A DNA stretch of 64,000 nucleotides, from positions 1-64,000 of the IMG/VR virus record IMGVR_UViG_3300033984_000473; one strand, 5' to 3'. The notes beneath the pieces were generated by a model. That model was not told the origin of the DNA. It was given only the letters and a program-made list of their open reading frames with translations, and made no database searches. Below are positions 28,252 to 52,227 of this stretch, piece after piece. Made by a program: the position numbers and the translations under genes. Positions within the stretch are counted from its first letter, which is position 1. Each line of letters starts with the position of its first letter.

Positions 28252-28301
28252 TGTAATTTTATCAAAAATCGTTTTAACCTTAAAAAAATTAAAAAAAAAT
28301 A

Positions 28302-39743: not shown

Positions 39744-40562
39744 TTACTTTAGAGTGTATACTTTTTTTTTTAAAGTCCCTTCAGTTAAACTATCAATGAT
39801 TGAATCCATGTTTTCCATAGCTCTAATTATTGAAAGTTTATGAGATTCTTTGATAGCTCCGTCTTTTGGGTCTTTATCAGCACCATTTGGAACACCATCA
39901 CCATCATCATCAATACCTAATTTCTCTTTGTCGTTTCCAGTATATTTTCCTGGGTTTTTAATCATTTCATCTATAGCTTGTTCAGCTTCAGTTAAATCTT
40001 CTTCTTTATTTTTTTTTATTCTATAATCAGCATCGTTATCTTCATCTTCTTCCTCTTTATCATAATCTTTTTCATCTTCTGGATTTGGACCATCTTCCCA
40101 TTCAAATAATGGTGTATTGTGTTCCATGTTTCCTTCATTAGAAAATCCATTACCACCATATTGTGAGAACCCAGCAACATTTTCAGTTAATAGGTTATCA
40201 TTTTTGAATACGTTGATGTCACCACCTTGTCCGTAAGCTTCAGCCAAAGATTTAAAATTAAGATTTAAGTGCTTGATTGCTTTAGCATATGAGCCATAAG
40301 CTTCTGATTTTTTGTTTTGTAAACCACCGATGTATTTAAAGTCTTCAGCTAAAATGCTAGAAACTTTATTTGTTACTTTGATATAGTATTCGTGGTTTTC
40401 TCTTACGATAGCATAAGATTTACCGTCTGGACCAACTTTTGTTAATTCCACAACAGAATTTGAATGATTTTCATTGATAGAAGAAATACCCATCAATTCT
40501 TTCATACGCTCATTAATTTCGTTACCTTTTAGGCCAACAGGGTTTATTTTATTGTTTTTCAT
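39744..40562 (-). CDS. Putative prohead core/internal protein (N-terminal part of possible frameshift fusion)
   Basis: RMKELMG, INEN, LLTEN, IKES; ends …LKKKVYTLK* over TTT-A10. Confidence 0.72.
   Translation of the reverse strand: MKNNKINPVGLKGNEINERMKELMGISSINENHSNSVVELTKVGPDGKSYAIVRENHEYYIKVTNKVSSILAEDFKYIGGLQNKKSEAYGSYAKAIKHLNLNFKSLAEAYGQGGDINVFKNDNLLTENVAGFSQYGGNGFSNEGNMEHNTPLFEWEDGPNPEDEKDYDKEEEDEDNDADYRIKKNKEEDLTEAEQAIDEMIKNPGKYTGNDKEKLGIDDDGDGVPNGADKDPKDGAIKESHKLSIIRAMENMDSIIDSLTEGTLKKKVYTLK
39762..39774 (-). other. Slippery site T TTA AAA AAA AAA (candidate -1 frameshift or transcriptional slippage)
   Basis: The -1 frame opens two codons before this site and the 0 frame closes five codons after it. 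Confidence 0.6.
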
Positions 40563-45669: not shown

Positions 45670-45700
45670 TTGCATTTATAATAATTTTTTAGTACCTTTG
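45670..45700 (+). promoter_or_regulatory. Bacteroidota-type promoter TTG-N20-TACCTTTG (rightward, clpC)
   Basis: TTG 45670-72, TACCTTTG 45693-700; back-to-back with the leftward promoter. Confidence 0.7.
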
Positions 45701-45727
45701 CTAAAGAAATATAAACCTACAAAAAAT

Positions 45728-48229
45728 ATGAATAGAGAGATTTATCCGAAAGTTAAAATTATCATGAACCATGCGATAAAAGAGGCAAAATCTTTCGATG
45801 ATGTTAAGGTCAGACCAGAGCATGTAATTCTATCAATGTTGATTGATAATGACAATGAATGTACGAAAGTACTTAATGTTTTAAACATTGACACAATAGA
45901 ATTATATGACAAGATTTCTGATTTCTTAAGAAAAAGTGATTTAACACCTAGAGTTGGTAGTTCTAGAAAAACCCTACCATTTTCAGATGAAACCAAAGCC
46001 ATTATCAAAACTTTGGACGATGAATGTGAAAAATTAAATGATAATATGATTGATACGACTCACGTTATGTTAGGAATATTATTTGCTAAGCTTCCAGTAA
46101 GCGAAGTTTTAACCAAGTTAGGAATAACTTATAACCGTTTTAAAAAAACAATGAAAGACATGGATAATCCAAAGAATAGTGCACCAAGTAGTGGTGATGA
46201 ACAGGACGAAAACGAAGCGTTCAAAAGAAGACAAAAACCAGTAGATGCTAAATCAAAAACTCCAGTATTGGATAATTTTTGTAGAGATGTATCTAAAGCA
46301 GCTGAAAAGGGTGAAATTGACCCAGTTGTTGGTCGTGAAAAAGAAATCAAACGTGTTTCTCAAATTCTTTCTCGTAGAAAGAAAAACAATCCAATCCTTA
46401 TTGGTGAGCCTGGTGTTGGTAAAACTTCTATCGTAGAAGGGCTTGCTCAGCTTATCAAAGATGGTGAAGCTCCAAGAACCCTTAATGGTAAAAGACTTTT
46501 CACGTTAGACCTAGCTTCAATTGTTGCTGGTACAAAATATCGTGGACAATTTGAGGAAAGAATGAAAGCAATCCTTGAAGAATGTAAAGCCAACCCAGAT
46601 GTTGTGTTATTTATTGATGAGTTACACACTATCATCGGTGCTGGTAATGCCTCTGGTTCACTAGATGCTAGTAATATCTTCAAGCCAGCTTTGGCTCGTG
46701 GTGAACTACAAGTAATCGGAGCGACAACTCTTGACGAATACCGTGAGAATATTGAGAAAGATGGTGCGTTGACCAGACGTTTCCAACAAGTATTGGTTGA
46801 AGAACCAACGCTAGAAGAAACAAAAACAATCCTTATGAATATCAAGGATAAATACGAAAAACACCACAAGGTAAAATACACTGATGAAGCTATCGATGAG
46901 TGCGTTAAATTATCTGCTCGTTACATTATGGAAAGAAGTATGCCAGACAAAGCTATCGATGTGATGGATGAAGCTGGTGCTAGTACCAATGTTAGTGTTG
47001 AAAAACCAGAAAACATCAAAGAACTTGAAAATAAAAAACGAGAAATAAACATCGTTAAAAAAGAAGTTGTTCAAAAACAAAAATACGAAGAAGCGGCTAA
47101 GCTTAGAGATGAAGAAAAAAATATCATCGAAGAATTAGAAAAAGCTACAGCTATTTGGCAAGAATCTTTAGATAGCAAACAAACCATCGTTGGTGTTGAT
47201 ATGATTTCAGAAGTTGTATCTATGATGACTGGAATTCCACTGAACAAAATCTCAACCCAAGAAGGGAAAAGACTTATCAATATGGATAAAGACCTTATGG
47301 GTAAAGTTATTGGTCAAGATTCAGCAGTAACCAAAGTTGTTAAAGCCATAAAGCGTAACCGTATTGGAATAAAAGATAAAAACAAACCAGTTGGTTCATT
47401 TATATTTTTAGGTCCAACAGGTGTAGGTAAAACACTCTTGGCTAAATTGTTGGCTGAACAAGTATTTGGTGATGCAGAAGCTCTTGTAAGAATGGATATG
47501 TCAGAATACATGGAAAAACATTCAGTATCTAGACTTATCGGCCCACCACCAGGATATGTCGGTTACGACCAAGGTGGTCAGTTAACTGAAAAAGTAAGAA
47601 GAAAACCACACTGTGTTATCTTATTTGATGAAATCGAAAAGGCCCACGAAGATGTATTCAACGTTCTATTGCAATTATTAGATGAAGGTCAATTAACAGA
47701 TGGGTTAGGTCGAAAGGTTAACTTTAAAAATGCTTTGATTATCTTGACTTCAAACATTGGTGTAAGAGAAGTTAATTCATTTGGTAAAACAATGGGGTTT
47801 GAAACTGAATCTAATGTAATCAATGAAGAAAATAAAGCTCGTGCTATCATTGAGAAAGCTTTAAAGAAAAAATTTAAACCAGAATTCCTTAATCGTATCG
47901 ATGAAGCTATCGTGTTTAATGCTCTTAAAGAAGAAGATATCCATAAGATTATCTACATTGAAATTGAGAAACTATCTGAAAGAATCAATGAAATGAATTA
48001 TAAGTTAGAAATAACCAAAGATGCTATTGAATTTTTAGCTAGACAAGGTTATGATGAAGCTTATGGTGCTAGACCATTAACCAGAGCAATTCAACACTAT
48101 GTTGAGGACCCAGTTGCCGATGAAATACTTAACGGTAACATTTTAGAAGGTGAAACGATTGAAATTACTTTTGATAAAACAAAAGAAGAAATCGTAGTCC
48201 AAGCAAAAAAAACTAAAAAAACTAAATAA
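45728..48229 (+). CDS. clpC: ClpC-type AAA+ unfoldase (Clp N domain, two AAA modules, UVR-like middle domain)
   Basis: GEPGVGKT, FIDELH, GPTGVGKT, RMDMSEYMEKHSVSRLIG, LFDEIEKAH, QKYEEAAKLRD, MGF ClpP-docking-like loop. Confidence 0.93.
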   Translation: MNREIYPKVKIIMNHAIKEAKSFDDVKVRPEHVILSMLIDNDNECTKVLNVLNIDTIELYDKISDFLRKSDLTPRVGSSRKTLPFSDETKAIIKTLDDECEKLNDNMIDTTHVMLGILFAKLPVSEVLTKLGITYNRFKKTMKDMDNPKNSAPSSGDEQDENEAFKRRQKPVDAKSKTPVLDNFCRDVSKAAEKGEIDPVVGREKEIKRVSQILSRRKKNNPILIGEPGVGKTSIVEGLAQLIKDGEAPRTLNGKRLFTLDLASIVAGTKYRGQFEERMKAILEECKANPDVVLFIDELHTIIGAGNASGSLDASNIFKPALARGELQVIGATTLDEYRENIEKDGALTRRFQQVLVEEPTLEETKTILMNIKDKYEKHHKVKYTDEAIDECVKLSARYIMERSMPDKAIDVMDEAGASTNVSVEKPENIKELENKKREINIVKKEVVQKQKYEEAAKLRDEEKNIIEELEKATAIWQESLDSKQTIVGVDMISEVVSMMTGIPLNKISTQEGKRLINMDKDLMGKVIGQDSAVTKVVKAIKRNRIGIKDKNKPVGSFIFLGPTGVGKTLLAKLLAEQVFGDAEALVRMDMSEYMEKHSVSRLIGPPPGYVGYDQGGQLTEKVRRKPHCVILFDEIEKAHEDVFNVLLQLLDEGQLTDGLGRKVNFKNALIILTSNIGVREVNSFGKTMGFETESNVINEENKARAIIEKALKKKFKPEFLNRIDEAIVFNALKEEDIHKIIYIEIEKLSERINEMNYKLEITKDAIEFLARQGYDEAYGARPLTRAIQHYVEDPVADEILNGNILEGETIEITFDKTKEEIVVQAKKTKKTK

Positions 48230-48235
48230 TTAATC

Positions 48236-48263
48236 AAACCCACATTTTTTTGTGGGTTTTTTT
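48236..48263 (+). terminator. Intrinsic terminator after clpC, followed at once by a TATATTTATC motif
   Basis: AAACCCACA-TTTTTT-TGTGGGTTTTTTT. Confidence 0.8.
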
Positions 48264-48275
48264 ATATTTATCAAT

Positions 48276-49145
48276 ATGATAGAAGACATATTACAAAATA
48301 AATACGGAGAAAGCCTTAAAGCTTTAGACATATACGAAACAAACACTAGCCTCAAGCTTACTAGGATTATCGTTAATCCAGAAACTAGAGATACAGGCGT
48401 GGGTAGCAACGTTATGCAAGATTTAGTTAAGTATGCTGATGACAAAGGTAAAATAGTTACTTTAACACCATCTAAAGATTTTGGTGGAAATGTTAACAGA
48501 CTGGTTCAATTCTACAAAAGATTCGGTTTTAAAATGAATAAAGGACACAATAAAAACTTCCAGTTTATGGATACTATGATTCGATACCCAAAATTAGCTG
48601 GAATGAAAGAAAACTTTAAACCATTGATTAAAAATCTTCTTAGAGAAGCCATCGATAAAACAATCAAATGTAAAAAATGTGGATGGAAATGGAAATTAAA
48701 AGATGGCGGGGACGACCCATACGTTTGTCATAAATGCCATCCAGAGAATATACCAAAAAAGAAACCAATTAAAGAAGCTTTATTAAATAAAACAGATGCT
48801 GATATTTTAAAAGTAACTGACTTTGTTAATTTTGCTAAAGATTACCTAGAAATCAACGATGATATTAAAATAAGTTTAGCTTTTGAAAAAACACCAGACA
48901 TAAGAACTACAGCCTATTACAATAATGAAGGTTTCATAAAGGTTTATGTTAAAGATAGAGCAATAATTGATGTTTGTAGAAGTATCGCTCACGAGCTGGT
49001 ACACCATAAACAAAATCTAGATGGAAGATTTGAAGATGCTGTTGACCCAGGTGAAGATGGTAGTGAATTTGAAAATGAAGCTAACTCAGTAGCTGGAGTA
49101 CTAATAAGAAAATGGGGTAGAATACACCCAGAAATATACACTTAA
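48276..49145 (+). CDS. Modular protein: GNAT-like domain + Cys4 zinc ribbon + HExxH metallopeptidase-like domain
   Basis: VNPETRDTGVGS…RLVQFYKRFGF; CKKC…CHKC; RSIAHELVHH…ENEAN; linkers IKNLLREA and PIKEA. Confidence 0.7.
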   Translation: MIEDILQNKYGESLKALDIYETNTSLKLTRIIVNPETRDTGVGSNVMQDLVKYADDKGKIVTLTPSKDFGGNVNRLVQFYKRFGFKMNKGHNKNFQFMDTMIRYPKLAGMKENFKPLIKNLLREAIDKTIKCKKCGWKWKLKDGGDDPYVCHKCHPENIPKKKPIKEALLNKTDADILKVTDFVNFAKDYLEINDDIKISLAFEKTPDIRTTAYYNNEGFIKVYVKDRAIIDVCRSIAHELVHHKQNLDGRFEDAVDPGEDGSEFENEANSVAGVLIRKWGRIHPEIYT

Positions 49146-50065: not shown

Positions 50066-50593
50066 TTAGCCAATATACTCATGGCTAAAACAAATTCTTT
50101 TGTTGTCAAAGTAATGTTCTTTGTACATATTTTCAATTGAAACGTCTTTTCTCAATTTCTTATTCTTGCTAGTTGGTTTCCAAAGACTTGAATTTTCTCT
50201 GTAATAACCCATTCTAGGGTGTGCAGTTCTAGAGAAATACCTATGACCTTCATCTATGTGTATTTGAGCAATAGCATCTGAAAATCTAACACCTAATCCC
50301 ATTCCTTGATAATCTGGAAGAATAACTGTGCGGTGACCACGCCACGCATTTTTAAGGGTTCCACTTGGCATTGTTATGGCTGCACCGAACGCAACTACAT
50401 TTCCTTCCCATACTCCAATGTAACATCTGGAAGCTTTGTTTACATTTCCATCTAAATAGTGATGGTCCTTAAACATTCCCCAACTATCATAGTTTGTGCG
50501 ATATACGTCAATTTTGATTTCTGGTCGGGCAAAAAAAAACCGTCTAGCAATTCGCCTGTGTCGGTATCTAATACCCAATCTGGTTCTAACCAT
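50066..50593 (-). CDS. GNAT/Mom-like acetyltransferase domain; probably the C-terminal half of an ABC-ATPase fusion reached by -1 frameshift
   Basis: RPEIKI…WGMFKDHHYL…RTVILPDYQGMGLG; no plausible own start, the N-terminus before the T9 run looks non-coding. Confidence 0.75.
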   Translation of the reverse strand: MVRTRLGIRYRHRRIARRFFFARPEIKIDVYRTNYDSWGMFKDHHYLDGNVNKASRCYIGVWEGNVVAFGAAITMPSGTLKNAWRGHRTVILPDYQGMGLGVRFSDAIAQIHIDEGHRYFSRTAHPRMGYYRENSSLWKPTSKNKKLRKDVSIENMYKEHYFDNKRICFSHEYIG

Positions 50594-51141
50594 TCTAATA
50601 TGTCCCTATGACACGTTGATAATACTATGTTTTCCAAGTCGTTGTTTCTTATATACCTAGACAAAGATACACTAGCAGCCTTGGCCACCGCCCTATCAAC
50701 AACACTAGTAAACTCATCTATAACAACGTTAGATTTAATCTTACGAGCCAAGTCAGCTCTGAATTTTTCACCGTTGGATAGCACATGATATGGTTTATAC
50801 CACGATGGTACGGAATTCAACCCAACACTACCCAATTTATTTATAGCCTCGTCTGGACTAGCAAAATGTGATACAATAGATTTGTTTGATTCCCATACAG
50901 GATTTTCTTCAGTTCCGAATTGTTTTAAAAGAGTAGATTTACCAGAACCACTTGAACCAACGATTACTCCTAGTTTAAATTTTTTTGGTAGATTTGTGGG
51001 TAATTTCCACTGGTAGAATTTTGACGTACCATCGAAAGCACAATCAAAAGCTTTTTCACTGGCCGTGATAAAATCATCTCGGTCAACACTAGACACCAAG
51101 GGTTCGGTATCTTTAATTAATTTTTGGATAACTTTTTCCAT
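50452..51141 (-). CDS. Soluble ABC-type ATPase domain
   Basis: GSSGSGKSTLL, LSNGEKFRADLAR, VIDEFTSVVDR, STCH; no transmembrane partner nearby. Confidence 0.85.
   Translation of the reverse strand: MEKVIQKLIKDTEPLVSSVDRDDFITASEKAFDCAFDGTSKFYQWKLPTNLPKKFKLGVIVGSSGSGKSTLLKQFGTEENPVWESNKSIVSHFASPDEAINKLGSVGLNSVPSWYKPYHVLSNGEKFRADLARKIKSNVVIDEFTSVVDRAVAKAASVSLSRYIRNNDLENIVLSTCHRDILEWLEPDWVLDTDTGELLDGFFLPDQKSKLTYIAQTMIVGECLRTITI
50531..50541 (-). other. Slippery site GG-T9 joining the ATPase (0 frame) and acetyltransferase (-1 frame)
   Basis: 0 frame GGT TTT TTT TTG CCC; -1 frame CGG TTT TTT TTT GCC CGA CCA GAA. Confidence 0.6.
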
Positions 51142-51158
51142 GAAACTTTTTTTAAATA

Positions 51159-51197
51159 AAATAGCTAGGGATGCATAAAATAATGTCCCTAGCTATT
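51159..51197 (-). terminator. Stem-loop, probable terminator
   Basis: AATAGCTAGGGA…TCCCTAGCTATT inverted repeat. Confidence 0.6.
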
Positions 51198-51696: not shown

Positions 51697-52227
51697 TTAA
51701 CACTTTCTGTCAGCCGCAGTTGAAGCCGCCCATGCATCTGGTTTTATCTTGAAATCGTAACCCATACCTAAGATGTAACCAACGGCAGATTGTAACGCTT
51801 TGTTAGAATCGTGTTTAGGGTCTGGGTTAATATCTGCGTGAATTTCCATCTTGATTTCGTATAAGTCTAATAACTCAGCAATTTCAGTGGCAACTTCAAT
51901 AGATTTCCCTACCTCAAATACCATTCTTTCATTTACTAGTTCTTTGTCTCTTTTTTTTCCATCTAAGTCTTTTTTCTTAAAGTCATGATTATAAGTAGCC
52001 GAAATAATCATACCACCACGGCCCCAAATAACACCACCACCCAAATCCTCGGTAGCGGTAATAAGGATAACTGTCGCAAATCTATAAAGCGTTTTGCTTA
52101 TTTTTTGCGAGTCAGTACCAATAGATACTTTAAGTATTTTATTTTTTGCTAATTCTTCGTCAAAAAGGTTAGCTAAGTAATCTACTATAGATTCTTCAAT
52201 TACTTTGTCATTTCTTTTCCATTTCAT
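51697..52227 (-). CDS. RNase H-like YkuK-family protein
   Basis: IGTDSQ, ERMVFEVGKS, EIHADIN, KPDAWAASTAADR. Confidence 0.82.
   Translation of the reverse strand: MKWKRNDKVIEESIVDYLANLFDEELAKNKILKVSIGTDSQKISKTLYRFATVILITATEDLGGGVIWGRGGMIISATYNHDFKKKDLDGKKRDKELVNERMVFEVGKSIEVATEIAELLDLYEIKMEIHADINPDPKHDSNKALQSAVGYILGMGYDFKIKPDAWAASTAADRKC

What the first reader, a model, noticed from the sequence alone, without database searches (positions are those of the whole stretch)
50066..51141. ABC-ATPase and Mom-like acetyltransferase split by a T9 run: frameshift-controlled modification enzyme
Seen: the ATPase frame runs through GGT TTT TTT TTG and stops 27 codons later. The -1 frame gives FARPEIKID…HHYL…RTVILPDYQGMGLG, has no credible start, and a shift would give ~358 aa. 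Known: GNAT proteins with an HY motif include the Mu Mom family of DNA-modifying enzymes, and ATPase-GNAT fusions of this type occur in phages. Inference: ribosomal or transcriptional slippage, or phase variation of the T tract, limits or switches a possibly toxic anti-restriction modification. With the A10 site this makes two -1 junctions in the window, while other long runs (e.g. A8 near 51951) stay in frame.
Basis: partly seen in the sequence, partly recalled or inferred. Interest (0 to 1): 0.7.

Follow-up and report, generated by a model that had tools for sequence, protein, structure and literature searches.

The report
Programmed frameshift in phage ABC–GNAT gene
A run of nine T's between the ATPase half and the acetyltransferase half of one phage gene is a conserved slippery site, so a single gene most likely yields both a short ATPase-only protein and a long ATPase–acetyltransferase fusion, a recoding case I found no report of for this widespread family of predicted DNA-modifying enzymes.

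Summary
On the minus strand, an ABC-ATPase ORF (51141→50452) runs through GGT TTT TTT TTG (T9 = 50539→50531). The GNAT domain continues in the −1 frame to 50066.

It is not an assembly error, a pseudogene or two separate genes:
- About 55 diverged relatives from roughly 50 metagenomes keep the same −1 split at the same place.
- Fifty keep T9. One has T8. Three have A AAT TTT, a classical X XXY YYZ heptamer, in the same phase.
- In 54 of 56 loci the GNAT frame has no start codon.
- GNAT dN/dS is 0.15, against 0.13 for the ATPase.
- Synonymous variation collapses exactly between the slip site and the 0-frame stop, a dual-coding signature.
- Other lineages (Lactococcus phage P335, Streptococcus prophages, Bacteroidota and CPR phages) carry A9, A10 or T7 tracts at the same linker, nearly always in the −1 arrangement.

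Best reading: programmed −1 slippage, ribosomal and possibly also transcriptional, yields a 229-aa ATPase and a 358-aa ATPase–GNAT fusion.

"Mom-like" is not supported, and DNA modification is only a published prediction.

Unexpectedly, in-frame relatives carry an RF2-like +1 cassette and keep the alternative frame open. The whole family may therefore be recoded.

The parts
50452..51141 (-). 0-frame ORF: ABC-type ATPase domain (residues 1-203) plus a 26-aa tail read from the overlap. This is the short isoform, 229 aa.
   Evidence: Invariant Walker A, signature, Walker B and H-loop columns in 47 homologues. ABC nucleotide-binding-domain fold, pLDDT 91.
50531..50539 (-). T9 slippery tract. The in-phase heptamer T TTT TTT is 50539→50533, and the first T is the third base of the GGT codon.
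   Evidence: Conserved as T9 in 50 of 54 −1 loci that carry a recognised slip motif. Replaced in phase by T8 (L016) or A AAT TTT (L030, L035, L036).
50066..50533 (-). −1-frame coding part: linker and GNAT acetyltransferase domain, ending at stop TAA 50068-50066. HHYL lies at 50464-50453 and the acetyl-CoA motif QGMGLG at 50308-50291. Together with residues 1-203 it gives the long isoform, 358 aa.
   Evidence: dN/dS 0.146 with dS about 1.6, and no stop in 43 distinct relatives. GNAT fold in the model of a natural fused relative.
50452..50539 (-). Overlap window read in both frames: the 0-frame tail LPDQKSKLTYIAQTMIVGECLRTITI* and the GNAT N-terminus.
   Evidence: Synonymous variability falls from about 0.45-0.55 to 0.05-0.2 exactly here. 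dS is 0.43 here against 1.6 elsewhere. The 0-frame stop sits 26 codons after the heptamer in 53 of the 54 −1 clade loci with a recognised slip motif (L018: 30).
50452..50454 (-). 0-frame stop codon TAG, embedded in the Y-L-D codons of the GNAT HHYL motif.
   Evidence: A stop at the same place in the same relative frame occurs in 109 of 122 in-frame homologues.
50591..50593 (-). ATG in the −1 frame, 54 nt upstream of the tract. Judged incidental: it arises from the Glu-Trp codons of the ATPase frame.
   Evidence: In relatives this frame is closed by stops between here and the tract.
51150..51185 (-). Inverted repeat (TAGCTAGGGA...TCCCTAGCTA) followed by an A/T-rich stretch just upstream of the start codon. 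Probably the terminator of the upstream gene, which would give this gene its own promoter region.
   Evidence: Read directly. Not tested further.

Best explanation
The T9 tract is a programmed −1 recoding site at the linker between the ABC-ATPase domain and the GNAT domain of one gene.

- Ribosomes that stay in frame make a 229-aa ATPase with a 26-aa tail.
- Ribosomes that slip back one base on U UUU UUU continue into the GNAT frame and make a 358-aa ATPase–GNAT fusion with the junction ...LLDGFFFARPEIK.... Ribosomes translating mRNAs that gained one U by RNA-polymerase slippage on the nine T's would make the same protein.

Shown: the site, its phase and the −1 arrangement are conserved; the GNAT frame is under purifying selection and has no start codon of its own; the overlap behaves as dual-coding.

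Inferred:
- Ribosomal slippage is the main route, because relatives keep the arrangement with only a heptamer.
- The two isoforms pair through the ATP-dependent ABC head-to-tail dimer, so the frameshift sets the stoichiometry of ATPase to acetyltransferase.
- The enzyme acts on DNA. This is a literature prediction, backed by frequent ParB-domain neighbours in relatives.
For: 1. Both halves match one profile colinearly. Thousands of fused homologues exist: 7,971 with E ≤ 1e-10.
2. Of 80 related IMG/VR loci, 55 (63-92% aa identity, roughly 50 datasets) have the −1 split at the identical position. None has +1.
3. T9 is kept in 50 loci although flanking synonymous sites vary. L016 has T8. L030, L035 and L036 have GG A AAT TTT ACC in the same phase.
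4. The GNAT frame is open only 1-9 codons upstream and has no start codon in 54 of 56 loci.
5. dN/dS is 0.130 for the ATPase and 0.146 for the GNAT part.
6. Synonymous variability drops to 0.05-0.2 only between the slip site and the 0-frame stop.
7. Contigs of independent DNA runs and of six RNA-library contigs cross the tract without an indel.
8. Other lineages have the same −1 arrangement with in-phase A AAA AAA/G, T TTT TTT or A AAT TTT (L092, L095, L180, L188, L190, L194, L195, L199, L200, L235, L237, L178). It also occurs in Streptococcus phages, Lactococcus phage P335 and Thomasclavelia phages.
9. The slip site falls in the interdomain linker of a high-confidence model, pLDDT 91.
10. Complex prediction of long plus short isoform plus ATP scores ipSAE 0.79 against 0.06 for the best control. 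This mark was reached by 51 of 78 solved complexes and 2 of 108 mismatched pairs. The runs agree in at least 92% of contacts and the partner pLDDT is at least 83. The interface is a canonical Walker A/signature contact, and the short isoform's tail (218-229) pairs with GNAT strand 208-217.
Against: - No product has been observed and there is no read-level RNA or DNA data. The runs are held only as consensus contigs.
- No conserved downstream stem-loop or pseudoknot was found, and there is no Rfam match.
- This window, unlike its relatives, has an in-frame ATG upstream in the GNAT frame.
- T9 is longer than the seven bases a ribosomal slip needs. Natural in-frame T10 variants sit nested inside the clade (L043, L044, L046, L246, L247). 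Both facts fit RNA-polymerase slippage or evolutionary toggling as well.
- The complex model can score high from memory of solved ABC dimers.
- The alternative frame is stop-free in in-frame relatives too. The dual-coding signal is therefore not specific to the −1 arrangement.
Confidence: 0.85

Rival explanations
1. Transcriptional slippage is the main route. RNA polymerase stutters on the nine T's, a fraction of mRNAs carry U10, and standard translation of those gives the fusion. The product and its junction peptide are the same as with ribosomal slippage.
For: - The tract is kept at 9, two more than a ribosomal heptamer needs. The third Phe codon is TTT in 42 of 43 distinct sequences although the linker residues are not conserved family-wide.
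- Other lineages favour A9 or A10.
- In-frame members keep pure T10 or A10 tracts.
- From my own knowledge, runs of 9 or more A/T are the known threshold for bacterial RNA-polymerase slippage. The review PMC5009743 describes Thermus dnaX using it.
Against: - Relatives keep the same −1 arrangement with tracts too short for polymerase slippage: A AAT TTT (L030, L035, L036, L178), T7 (L194, L195, L200), T5/C5 (Streptococcus phages, P335), G5 (Thomasclavelia phages).
- Six RNA-library contigs have 9 as consensus. This is weak evidence, because contigs drop minority variants and the libraries may contain DNA.
Confidence: 0.25
2. DNA-level phase variation. The T tract changes length during replication, T9 is 'off' for the GNAT domain and T10 is 'on', and the population hedges its bets.
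For: - In-frame T10 variants are nested within the T9 clade. Nine fused GFFF/DFFF proteins are in the protein database; the two whose DNA was looked up both carry T10.
- The ATPase tree needs at least 13 changes between the −1 and in-frame states.
Against: - The clade shows 50 T9 against 3 T10. It has no T11 and no T8 with a changed frame.
- Non-homopolymer slip sites keep the −1 state.
- The 0-frame tail is itself constrained.
- No indel was found in any contig crossing the tract, from 8 runs.
Confidence: 0.07
3. Artefact or decay. The tract is a homopolymer sequencing or assembly error in a gene that is really fused, or a recent frameshift mutation has left a pseudogene.
For: It is a single metagenomic contig with a long homopolymer. 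Many homologues are fused in frame.
Against: - The same state is seen in about 50 independent assemblies and in cultured phages.
- Purifying selection acts on both parts.
- There are never stops in the GNAT frame, and there is a strong −1 over +1 asymmetry: 79 −1 linker cases (55 in the clade set, 2 in genomes, 22 in the Firmicutes-type set) against 1 (L104).
Confidence: 0.02
4. Two separate proteins. The GNAT half starts on its own at ATG 50593-50591, or by coupling to the ATPase ORF.
For: An ATG lies in the GNAT frame 54 nt upstream of the tract in this window. L047 has TTG codons there.
Against: - In 54 of 56 relatives this frame is closed by stops 1-9 codons before the tract and has no start codon.
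- The same holds in the Streptococcus and P335 lineage.
- The ATG arises from the conserved Glu-Trp codons of the ATPase frame.
Confidence: 0.03

Closest known systems
dnaX (tau/gamma subunits of DNA polymerase III)
   Same: One gene gives a short and a long product that share the N-terminal ATPase part. Different lineages reach this by different means: −1 ribosomal frameshift on A AAA AAG in E. coli, transcriptional slippage in Thermus, and a reversed arrangement in some bacteria where the long form needs the shift (review PMC5009743). The two products work in one complex.
   Different: The protein family is different (ABC ATPase plus GNAT). Here the long form needs the shift in the window's clade. 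No downstream hairpin was found. The short form carries a conserved 26-aa alternative-frame tail rather than one extra residue.
Phage tail assembly chaperones G/GT (lambda-like −1 frameshift)
   Same: A conserved −1 programmed frameshift in phage genes that sets a fixed ratio of a short and a C-terminally extended protein (my own knowledge).
   Different: Those are structural chaperones with no enzymatic domains. Their slip sites are G GGA AAG-type heptamers, not long homopolymers.
Shigella mxiE and IS-element T9/A9 transcriptional slippage
   Same: A run of nine T or A inside coding sequence joins two overlapping frames into one protein (my own knowledge; mxiE is mentioned in PMC5009743).
   Different: There the mechanism is shown to be RNA-polymerase slippage. 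Here relatives with short heptamers point to the ribosome, and the mechanism is untested.
prfB (release factor 2) +1 frameshift cassette
   Same: In-frame relatives of this gene, though not the window itself, carry GGAGG or GGGGG, then 3 nt, then CUU at the same linker. RF2 uses the shift site CUU_U with a GG_GGG or GG_AGG stimulator (PMC5009743).
   Different: The codon after CUU is a sense codon (CGG, CAA), not a stop. The predicted outcome is a truncated isoform, not the full-length protein. Nothing here is experimentally shown.
ABC ATPase–GNAT fusion family predicted to acylate a DNA base (Iyer et al. 2013, as cited in PMC7824862; PHROG 11143)
   Same: Same domain architecture and the same family: both halves match phrog_11143. 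Tenacibaculum phage pT24, named in that paper, is a homologue.
   Different: That work treats the family as a plain fusion and does not mention recoding. No ParB-domain gene was found in this phage record.
Mu Mom (PF25680)
   Same: Both are GNAT-fold acyl-CoA-type transferases encoded by phages, and expression of both is under translational-level control (Com for Mom; my own knowledge).
   Different: There is no sequence or profile similarity, no ATPase domain in Mom, and the regulation is of a different kind.

Membership tests
ABC-ATPase–GNAT fusion family (PHROG 11143; Iyer et al.) | N-terminal ABC-type nucleotide-binding domain with Walker A, signature (LSGGQ-like), Walker B and H-loop. | tested here: met
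   PF00005 E 3e-06; phrog_11143 E 3.5e-62. Invariant G62 S64 G65 G67 K68, L121 S122 G124, D142 E143 and H178. ABC nucleotide-binding-domain fold matches.
ABC-ATPase–GNAT fusion family (PHROG 11143; Iyer et al.) | C-terminal GNAT domain with the acetyl-CoA motif Q/R-x-x-G-x-G, colinear with the ATPase on one profile. | tested here: met
   PF00583 E 6.8e-05; phrog_11143 positions 198-350, E 1.5e-40. Invariant Q279 G280 G284. GNAT fold matches 2ae6 and 1y9k.
ABC-ATPase–GNAT fusion family (PHROG 11143; Iyer et al.) | Neighbouring ParB N-terminal-domain gene (typical, not universal). | tested here: not met
   ParB_N is the upstream neighbour in at least 30 of 124 diverse relatives. None was found in the 233-kb record of this phage, which is 64% complete.
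Mom family (Pfam PF25680) | Match to the Mom profile or to Mu Mom. | tested here: not met
   No PF25680 hit at E ≤ 1 for the GNAT half or at E ≤ 0.1 for a fused relative, whereas Mu Mom scores 2.4e-75. BLASTP E = 2.1.
Programmed −1 ribosomal frameshift site | Slippery heptamer X XXY YYZ in the phase of the upstream frame. | tested here: met
   T TTT TTT at 50539-50533, phased GG[T TTT TTT]. In-phase heptamers also occur in other lineages.
Programmed −1 ribosomal frameshift site | Site, phase and frame arrangement conserved among diverged relatives; downstream frame under purifying selection and without its own start. | tested here: met
   (55 loci; dN/dS 0.146; no start codon in 54 of 56).
Programmed −1 ribosomal frameshift site | Stimulatory element (downstream hairpin or pseudoknot, or upstream SD-like sequence). 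| tested here: inconclusive
   RNAalifold on 43 sequences found no consensus structure within 80 nt. Single-sequence z-scores are mostly near 0; only L016 reaches −3.6. No Rfam match.
Programmed −1 ribosomal frameshift site | Both protein products observed, with the junction peptide. | not testable with these tools
   Needs expression and mass spectrometry.
Transcriptional slippage site | Homopolymer of 9 or more A/T in the coding strand. | tested here: met
   T9.
Transcriptional slippage site | Tract length heterogeneous in RNA but not in DNA. | not testable with these tools
   All runs are held as consensus contigs. The consensus is 9 in three DNA contigs and six RNA-library contigs.
Phase-variable (contingency) homopolymer | Tract length varies freely among close relatives and within populations, shifting the gene among frames. 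| tested here: not met
   In the clade there are 50 T9, 3 T10, 1 T8 (a substitution with the frame kept) and no other length. No indel in any contig.

The most novel reading that the evidence does not exclude
The whole ABC-ATPase–GNAT family, thousands of phage and prophage genes, may be recoded at its interdomain linker so that every member makes two isoforms.

- '−1-type' genes, like this one, encode the short form in frame and reach the GNAT domain by −1 slippage on T9, A9, A10, T7 or A AAT TTT.
- 'In-frame' genes encode the fusion in frame and would reach the short form by an RF2-like +1 shift (GGAGG or GGGGG, 3 nt, CUU or GUU, then a rare CGG or CAA codon), or by slippage on A10 or T10.

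Support:
- The cassette is present in 87 of 128 distinct in-frame genes, against 2 hits in 40,643 other in-frame positions. It uses codons that make up about 5% of their synonymous sets in high-GC genes.
- The +1 frame is stop-free from the linker to HHYL in 119 of 119 genes, against 68 expected. It ends at the same place in 109 of 122.
- GC3 dips from 0.86 to 0.68 in that window.
- The short isoform's alternative-frame tail is predicted to add a strand to the GNAT sheet of the long isoform in an ABC heterodimer.
Probability: 0.5. Interest if true: 0.85.

Novelty: new member of a known kind. Interest (0 to 1): 0.72.

Why it matters
- It adds a well-supported programmed frameshift to a large, uncharacterised family of phage enzymes. 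The family is routinely mis-annotated as two genes, for example 'ABC transporter' plus 'hypothetical protein' in Lactococcus phage P335, Streptococcus prophages, Thomasclavelia phages and pT24.
- It says the functional unit is probably a defined mixture of an ATPase-only and an ATPase–GNAT protein. That changes how the predicted DNA-modifying activity should be reconstituted.
- If the family-wide reading holds, one protein family would use −1 slippage, an RF2-like +1 cassette without a stop codon, and homopolymer slippage interchangeably for the same output. That would be a natural test bed for how recoding mechanisms replace one another. It would also be a rare non-RF2 use of the SD-CUU cassette in bacteria and phages.

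Tried and rejected
- Near-identical DNA in the phage collection: no match.
- Mom membership: rejected.
- NCBIfam gave only sub-threshold generic ABC hits and nothing for the GNAT half.
- A conserved downstream RNA stimulator was not found and there is no Rfam hit. A recurrent long-range pairing (CCCGAC with GUUGGG) is perfect only in L016 and starts about 3 nt after the heptamer. I did not count it.
- A possible second heptamer, T TTA AAG, near the 0-frame stop is frequent in the clade. It is not conserved (L012, L014, L017, L026, L030), and this window has T TTA AGG, so I dropped it.
- The in-frame group L064-L085 was meant as a negative control for the synonymous-site dip. It showed a dip too (0.25 against 0.48). 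That led to the +1-cassette observation instead of serving as a control.
- Neighbouring genes in the window gave no functional clue. There is no ParB in the record.
- Frameshifted genome loci that are not at the linker were set aside as errors or unrelated: L090 (long-read MAG), L115 (insertion), L123 (masked N) and L179 (second indel).
- The 2013 paper that first described the family (PMC3763556) is not held. I rely on its citation in PMC7824862.
- Literature searches for a frameshift in this family found nothing relevant.
- Read-level tract heterogeneity could not be assessed, because every run is stored as contigs.
Full report
**1. What is there**

The window is part of a 232,931-bp IMG/VR virus record from fresh water. 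The finding lies on the minus strand.

- An ORF of 229 aa (51141→50452) encodes a complete ABC-type nucleotide-binding domain: Walker A, signature LSNGE, Walker B and an H-loop.
- It reads GAC GGT TTT TTT TTG CCC. The T9 run is 50539→50531.
- The 0 frame runs 26 more codons to a TAG at 50454-50452.
- The −1 frame from the tract to 50066 encodes a GNAT acetyltransferase with the HHYL and QGMGLG motifs.
- Both halves match one 357-position PHROG profile colinearly (phrog_11143). The ATPase matches positions 19-194 and the GNAT half positions 198-350.
- A −1 shift on the tract gives 358 aa.
- Runs of nine or more T/A are depleted in the window: 5 against 16.7 expected.

The one correction is that this window does have an ATG in the GNAT frame (50593-50591).

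**2. Not an error, not a pseudogene, not two genes**

A scan of IMG/VR with the GNAT half returned 80 loci.

- Fifty-five of them, with 63-92% amino-acid identity and from roughly 50 different datasets, have the ATPase and GNAT parts in the same 0/−1 relation, with the junction at the identical position. None is +1.
- Fifty carry GGTTTTTTTTT although neighbouring third-codon positions differ freely.
- L016 has T8 followed by C, with the frame unchanged.
- L030, L035 and L036 have GG A AAT TTT ACC, a textbook X XXY YYZ heptamer at the same nucleotide positions and in the same phase.
- In 54 of 56 −1 loci the GNAT frame is closed by a stop 1-9 codons before the heptamer and holds no ATG, GTG or TTG. 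Only this window and L047 are open further, by chance.
- Across 43 distinct sequences dN/dS is 0.130 for the ATPase and 0.146 for the GNAT part beyond the overlap, with dS near 1.6. No GNAT frame carries a stop.
- Contigs from two DNA runs and six RNA-library contigs from six runs cross the tract with no indel. These are consensus contigs, so they say nothing about minority tract lengths.

**3. A dual-coding signature**

I computed a synonymous-site profile: the fraction of sequence pairs with the same residue but different codons, in 9-codon windows.

- It is 0.35-0.6 along the whole gene.
- It falls to 0.05-0.2 precisely from the slip site to the 0-frame stop, then returns to 0.4-0.5.
- dS in this overlap is 0.43 against 1.6 elsewhere.
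- The 0-frame stop is 26 codons after the heptamer in 53 of the 54 −1 clade loci with a recognised slip motif (L018: 30), and the tail is conserved (consensus L-S-D-Q-K-S-x-S-K-Y-I-A-Q-T-M-I-V-G-E-C-L-K-T-I-T-I).

Both reading frames therefore appear to be under selection across the overlap. That argues that both products are made and matter.

I found no conserved downstream hairpin and no Rfam family.

**4. The same trick in other lineages**

- In cultured phages the gene is annotated as two ORFs with the same −1 relation. Examples are Thomasclavelia phages TR-TP1 and TR-TP2 (G5 at the junction), Streptococcus prophages and Lactococcus phage P335 (conserved CAG GTT TTT CRA TWC CCC CAC; no start codon in the GNAT frame), and an Oenococcus phage.
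- A second viral scan seeded with the Streptococcus GNAT half gave 55 in-frame, 23 −1 and one +1. The +1 case is caused by a second indel elsewhere.
- The −1 cases carry in-phase A AAA AAA/G (A9 or A10), T TTT TTT (T7) or A AAT TTT at the linker.
- Among 80 loci from bacterial and archaeal genomes, 73 are in frame. L092 (A9) and L095 (A10) are −1 at the linker. L104 (A9) is the only +1 case at the linker.
- A tree of the ATPase part alone (193 distinct sequences, FastTree) needs at least 13 changes between the −1 and in-frame states. It places the in-frame T10 variants (L043, L044) and the A AAT TTT variants inside the T9 clade.
- Natural in-frame members of the clade keep a pure T10.

**5. 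Mechanism**

The common denominator of all −1-type genes is an in-phase slippery heptamer. Several lineages have nothing longer (A AAT TTT, T7). Ribosomal −1 frameshifting is therefore the best-supported mechanism.

In this clade the tract is held at nine, two bases more than needed, and other lineages favour A9 or A10. These lengths are typical of RNA-polymerase slippage (my own knowledge; Thermus dnaX in PMC5009743). Transcriptional slippage may therefore contribute, and it would give the identical protein.

Phase variation is disfavoured by the fixed tract length. Assembly error and independent initiation are effectively excluded.

**6. Structure and a possible role for two isoforms**

- A natural fused relative (L044, T10) folds with pLDDT 91 into an ABC nucleotide-binding domain (1-205) and a GNAT domain (about 206-358). 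The slip site is in the linker.
- Fold matches are ABC transporter ATPases and generic GNATs.
- The short isoform's tail is low-confidence on its own, pLDDT 34-60.
- A complex prediction of the long isoform, the short isoform and two ATP scored 0.79, against 0.06 for the best of three controls. This mark was reached by 51 of 78 solved complexes and 2 of 108 mismatches. The runs agree in at least 92% of contacts, and the partner pLDDT is at least 83.
- The interface is the canonical head-to-tail ABC contact (Walker A 62-69 against signature 122-125). In addition, with the lowest expected errors, the tail residues 223-228 pair antiparallel with GNAT strand 209-214.
- The ABC part may be recalled from solved dimers, and the tail contact is only a prediction. 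It does offer a reason why the alternative-frame tail is conserved.
- I infer that the frameshift sets the ratio of partners in an ATP-dependent dimer that carries one or two GNAT domains.

**7. Function**

- The family has been described computationally as a GNAT coupled to an ABC ATPase and predicted to put an unknown acyl group on a DNA base. Tenacibaculum phage pT24 was given as a jumbo-phage example (PMC7824862, citing Iyer et al. 2013, which is not held).
- Consistent with a DNA-linked role, the upstream neighbour is a ParB N-terminal-domain protein in at least 30 of 124 diverse loci. In temperate phages the gene often sits beside a DNA methylase and just before the terminase.
- This phage record has no ParB domain and its local neighbours are uninformative.
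- The GNAT half is not a member of the Mom family.
- Toxicity and anti-restriction were not testable.

**8. An unexpected extension**

The in-frame relatives were meant as a control, but they also look recoded.

- In 119 of 119 distinct in-frame genes (GC 0.28-0.69), the +1 frame has no stop in the 27 codons up to HHYL. This is the frame that the ATPase uses in −1-type genes. Synonymous resampling predicts 68 open. The same frame has 0.039 stops per codon elsewhere in these genes. The +2 frame shows no avoidance: 31 open against 42 expected.
- In 109 of 122 genes that frame ends at the same position inside HHYL.
- At the linker, 87 of 128 in-frame genes carry GGAGG (64) or GGGGG (19), exactly 3 nt, then CTT (57) or GTT (30) in frame, followed mostly by CGG (37) or CAA (29). 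The same pattern occurs twice in 40,643 other in-frame positions. In high-GC genes the codons used make up only about 5% of their synonymous sets elsewhere.
- GC3 in 47 high-GC genes drops from 0.86 to 0.68 in the window, with minima at the cassette and at HHYL.
- The cassette resembles the release factor 2 +1 site: shift site CUU_U with a GG_GGG or GG_AGG stimulator (PMC5009743).
- Fourteen further in-frame genes have A10 or T10.
- Examples in cultured phages are Burkholderia phage phiE255 gp29 and Gordonia phage Jace gp86.
- This suggests, but does not show, that in-frame genes make the short isoform by a +1 shift. The family would then always make two isoforms.

**9. Comparison and novelty**

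- Functionally the closest analogue is dnaX. It makes two ATPase-sharing products by −1 frameshifting, by transcriptional slippage, or in a reversed arrangement, depending on lineage.
- The window's feature is a new member of a known kind, a programmed −1 recoding site, in a family where I found no report of recoding. The library searched is incomplete.
- The family-wide, two-direction recoding would be a new variant if confirmed.

**10. Verdict**

- Confidence that this is a selected recoding site giving two products: 0.85.
- Interest: 0.72.

Noticed in passing
window 39762-39771 (T10 on the plus strand, which is A10 on the minus strand): The A10 run sits at the end of a minus-strand ORF (40562→39744, 272 aa). 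Just after it comes a 583-aa ORF (39723→37972) that lies in the −1 frame relative to the first. Both proteins have unknown function: the first has no PHROG hit and the second has only unknown-function hits.
   Followed up: partly
L064-L245 (in-frame homologues), linker 23-24 codons before HHYL: An RF2-like cassette (GGAGG or GGGGG, 3 nt, CTT or GTT, then CGG or CAA) is present in 87 of 128 in-frame genes. The +1 frame is stop-free up to HHYL in 119 of 119.
   Followed up: yes
L003:1639-1641 (Tenacibaculum phage pT24, LC168164.1): The pT24 homologue is in frame at the linker but has an in-frame TGA inside the GNAT domain, and it is annotated as two 'ABC transporter ATP-binding' genes. This could be a nonsense mutation, read-through or a sequencing error; which one is undecided.
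   Followed up: no
L252 (Lactococcus phage P335, orf24/orf25) and L253 (Oenococcus phage unk162): These cultured dairy and wine phages have the same −1 split. The second ORF is annotated as starting after the HHYL motif. P335 shares the conserved CAG GTT TTT CAA TAC CCC CAC junction of the Streptococcus prophages.
   Followed up: partly
window 40009-40017 and 28291-28299: These are the other two T9/A9 runs of the window. One lies inside the 272-aa minus-strand ORF, where it reads in frame as Lys codons. The other lies just downstream of the ORF 29027→28302, probably as a terminator tail.
   Followed up: no
window 48252-49145 (+): This 297-aa ORF has a GNAT-like N-terminal part (phrog_3810 acetyltransferase; it also matches part of a 3,925-position profile, phrog_10691) and an HELVHH motif near the C-terminus. 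It is a second acetyltransferase-like gene 1 kb from the one studied.
   Followed up: no
window 45698-48229 (+) and L246: A ClpB-like 843-aa AAA+ chaperone gene lies near the ABC–GNAT gene. The same neighbourhood is seen in a relative from an NCBI assembly.
   Followed up: no
runs X21, X23, X25 (mosquito metatranscriptomes) and X28 (wastewater): Close relatives of this freshwater phage gene (95-99% identical over 200-320 nt) appear in RNA libraries from mosquito and wastewater samples. Whether this is RNA or carried-over DNA is not known.
   Followed up: no
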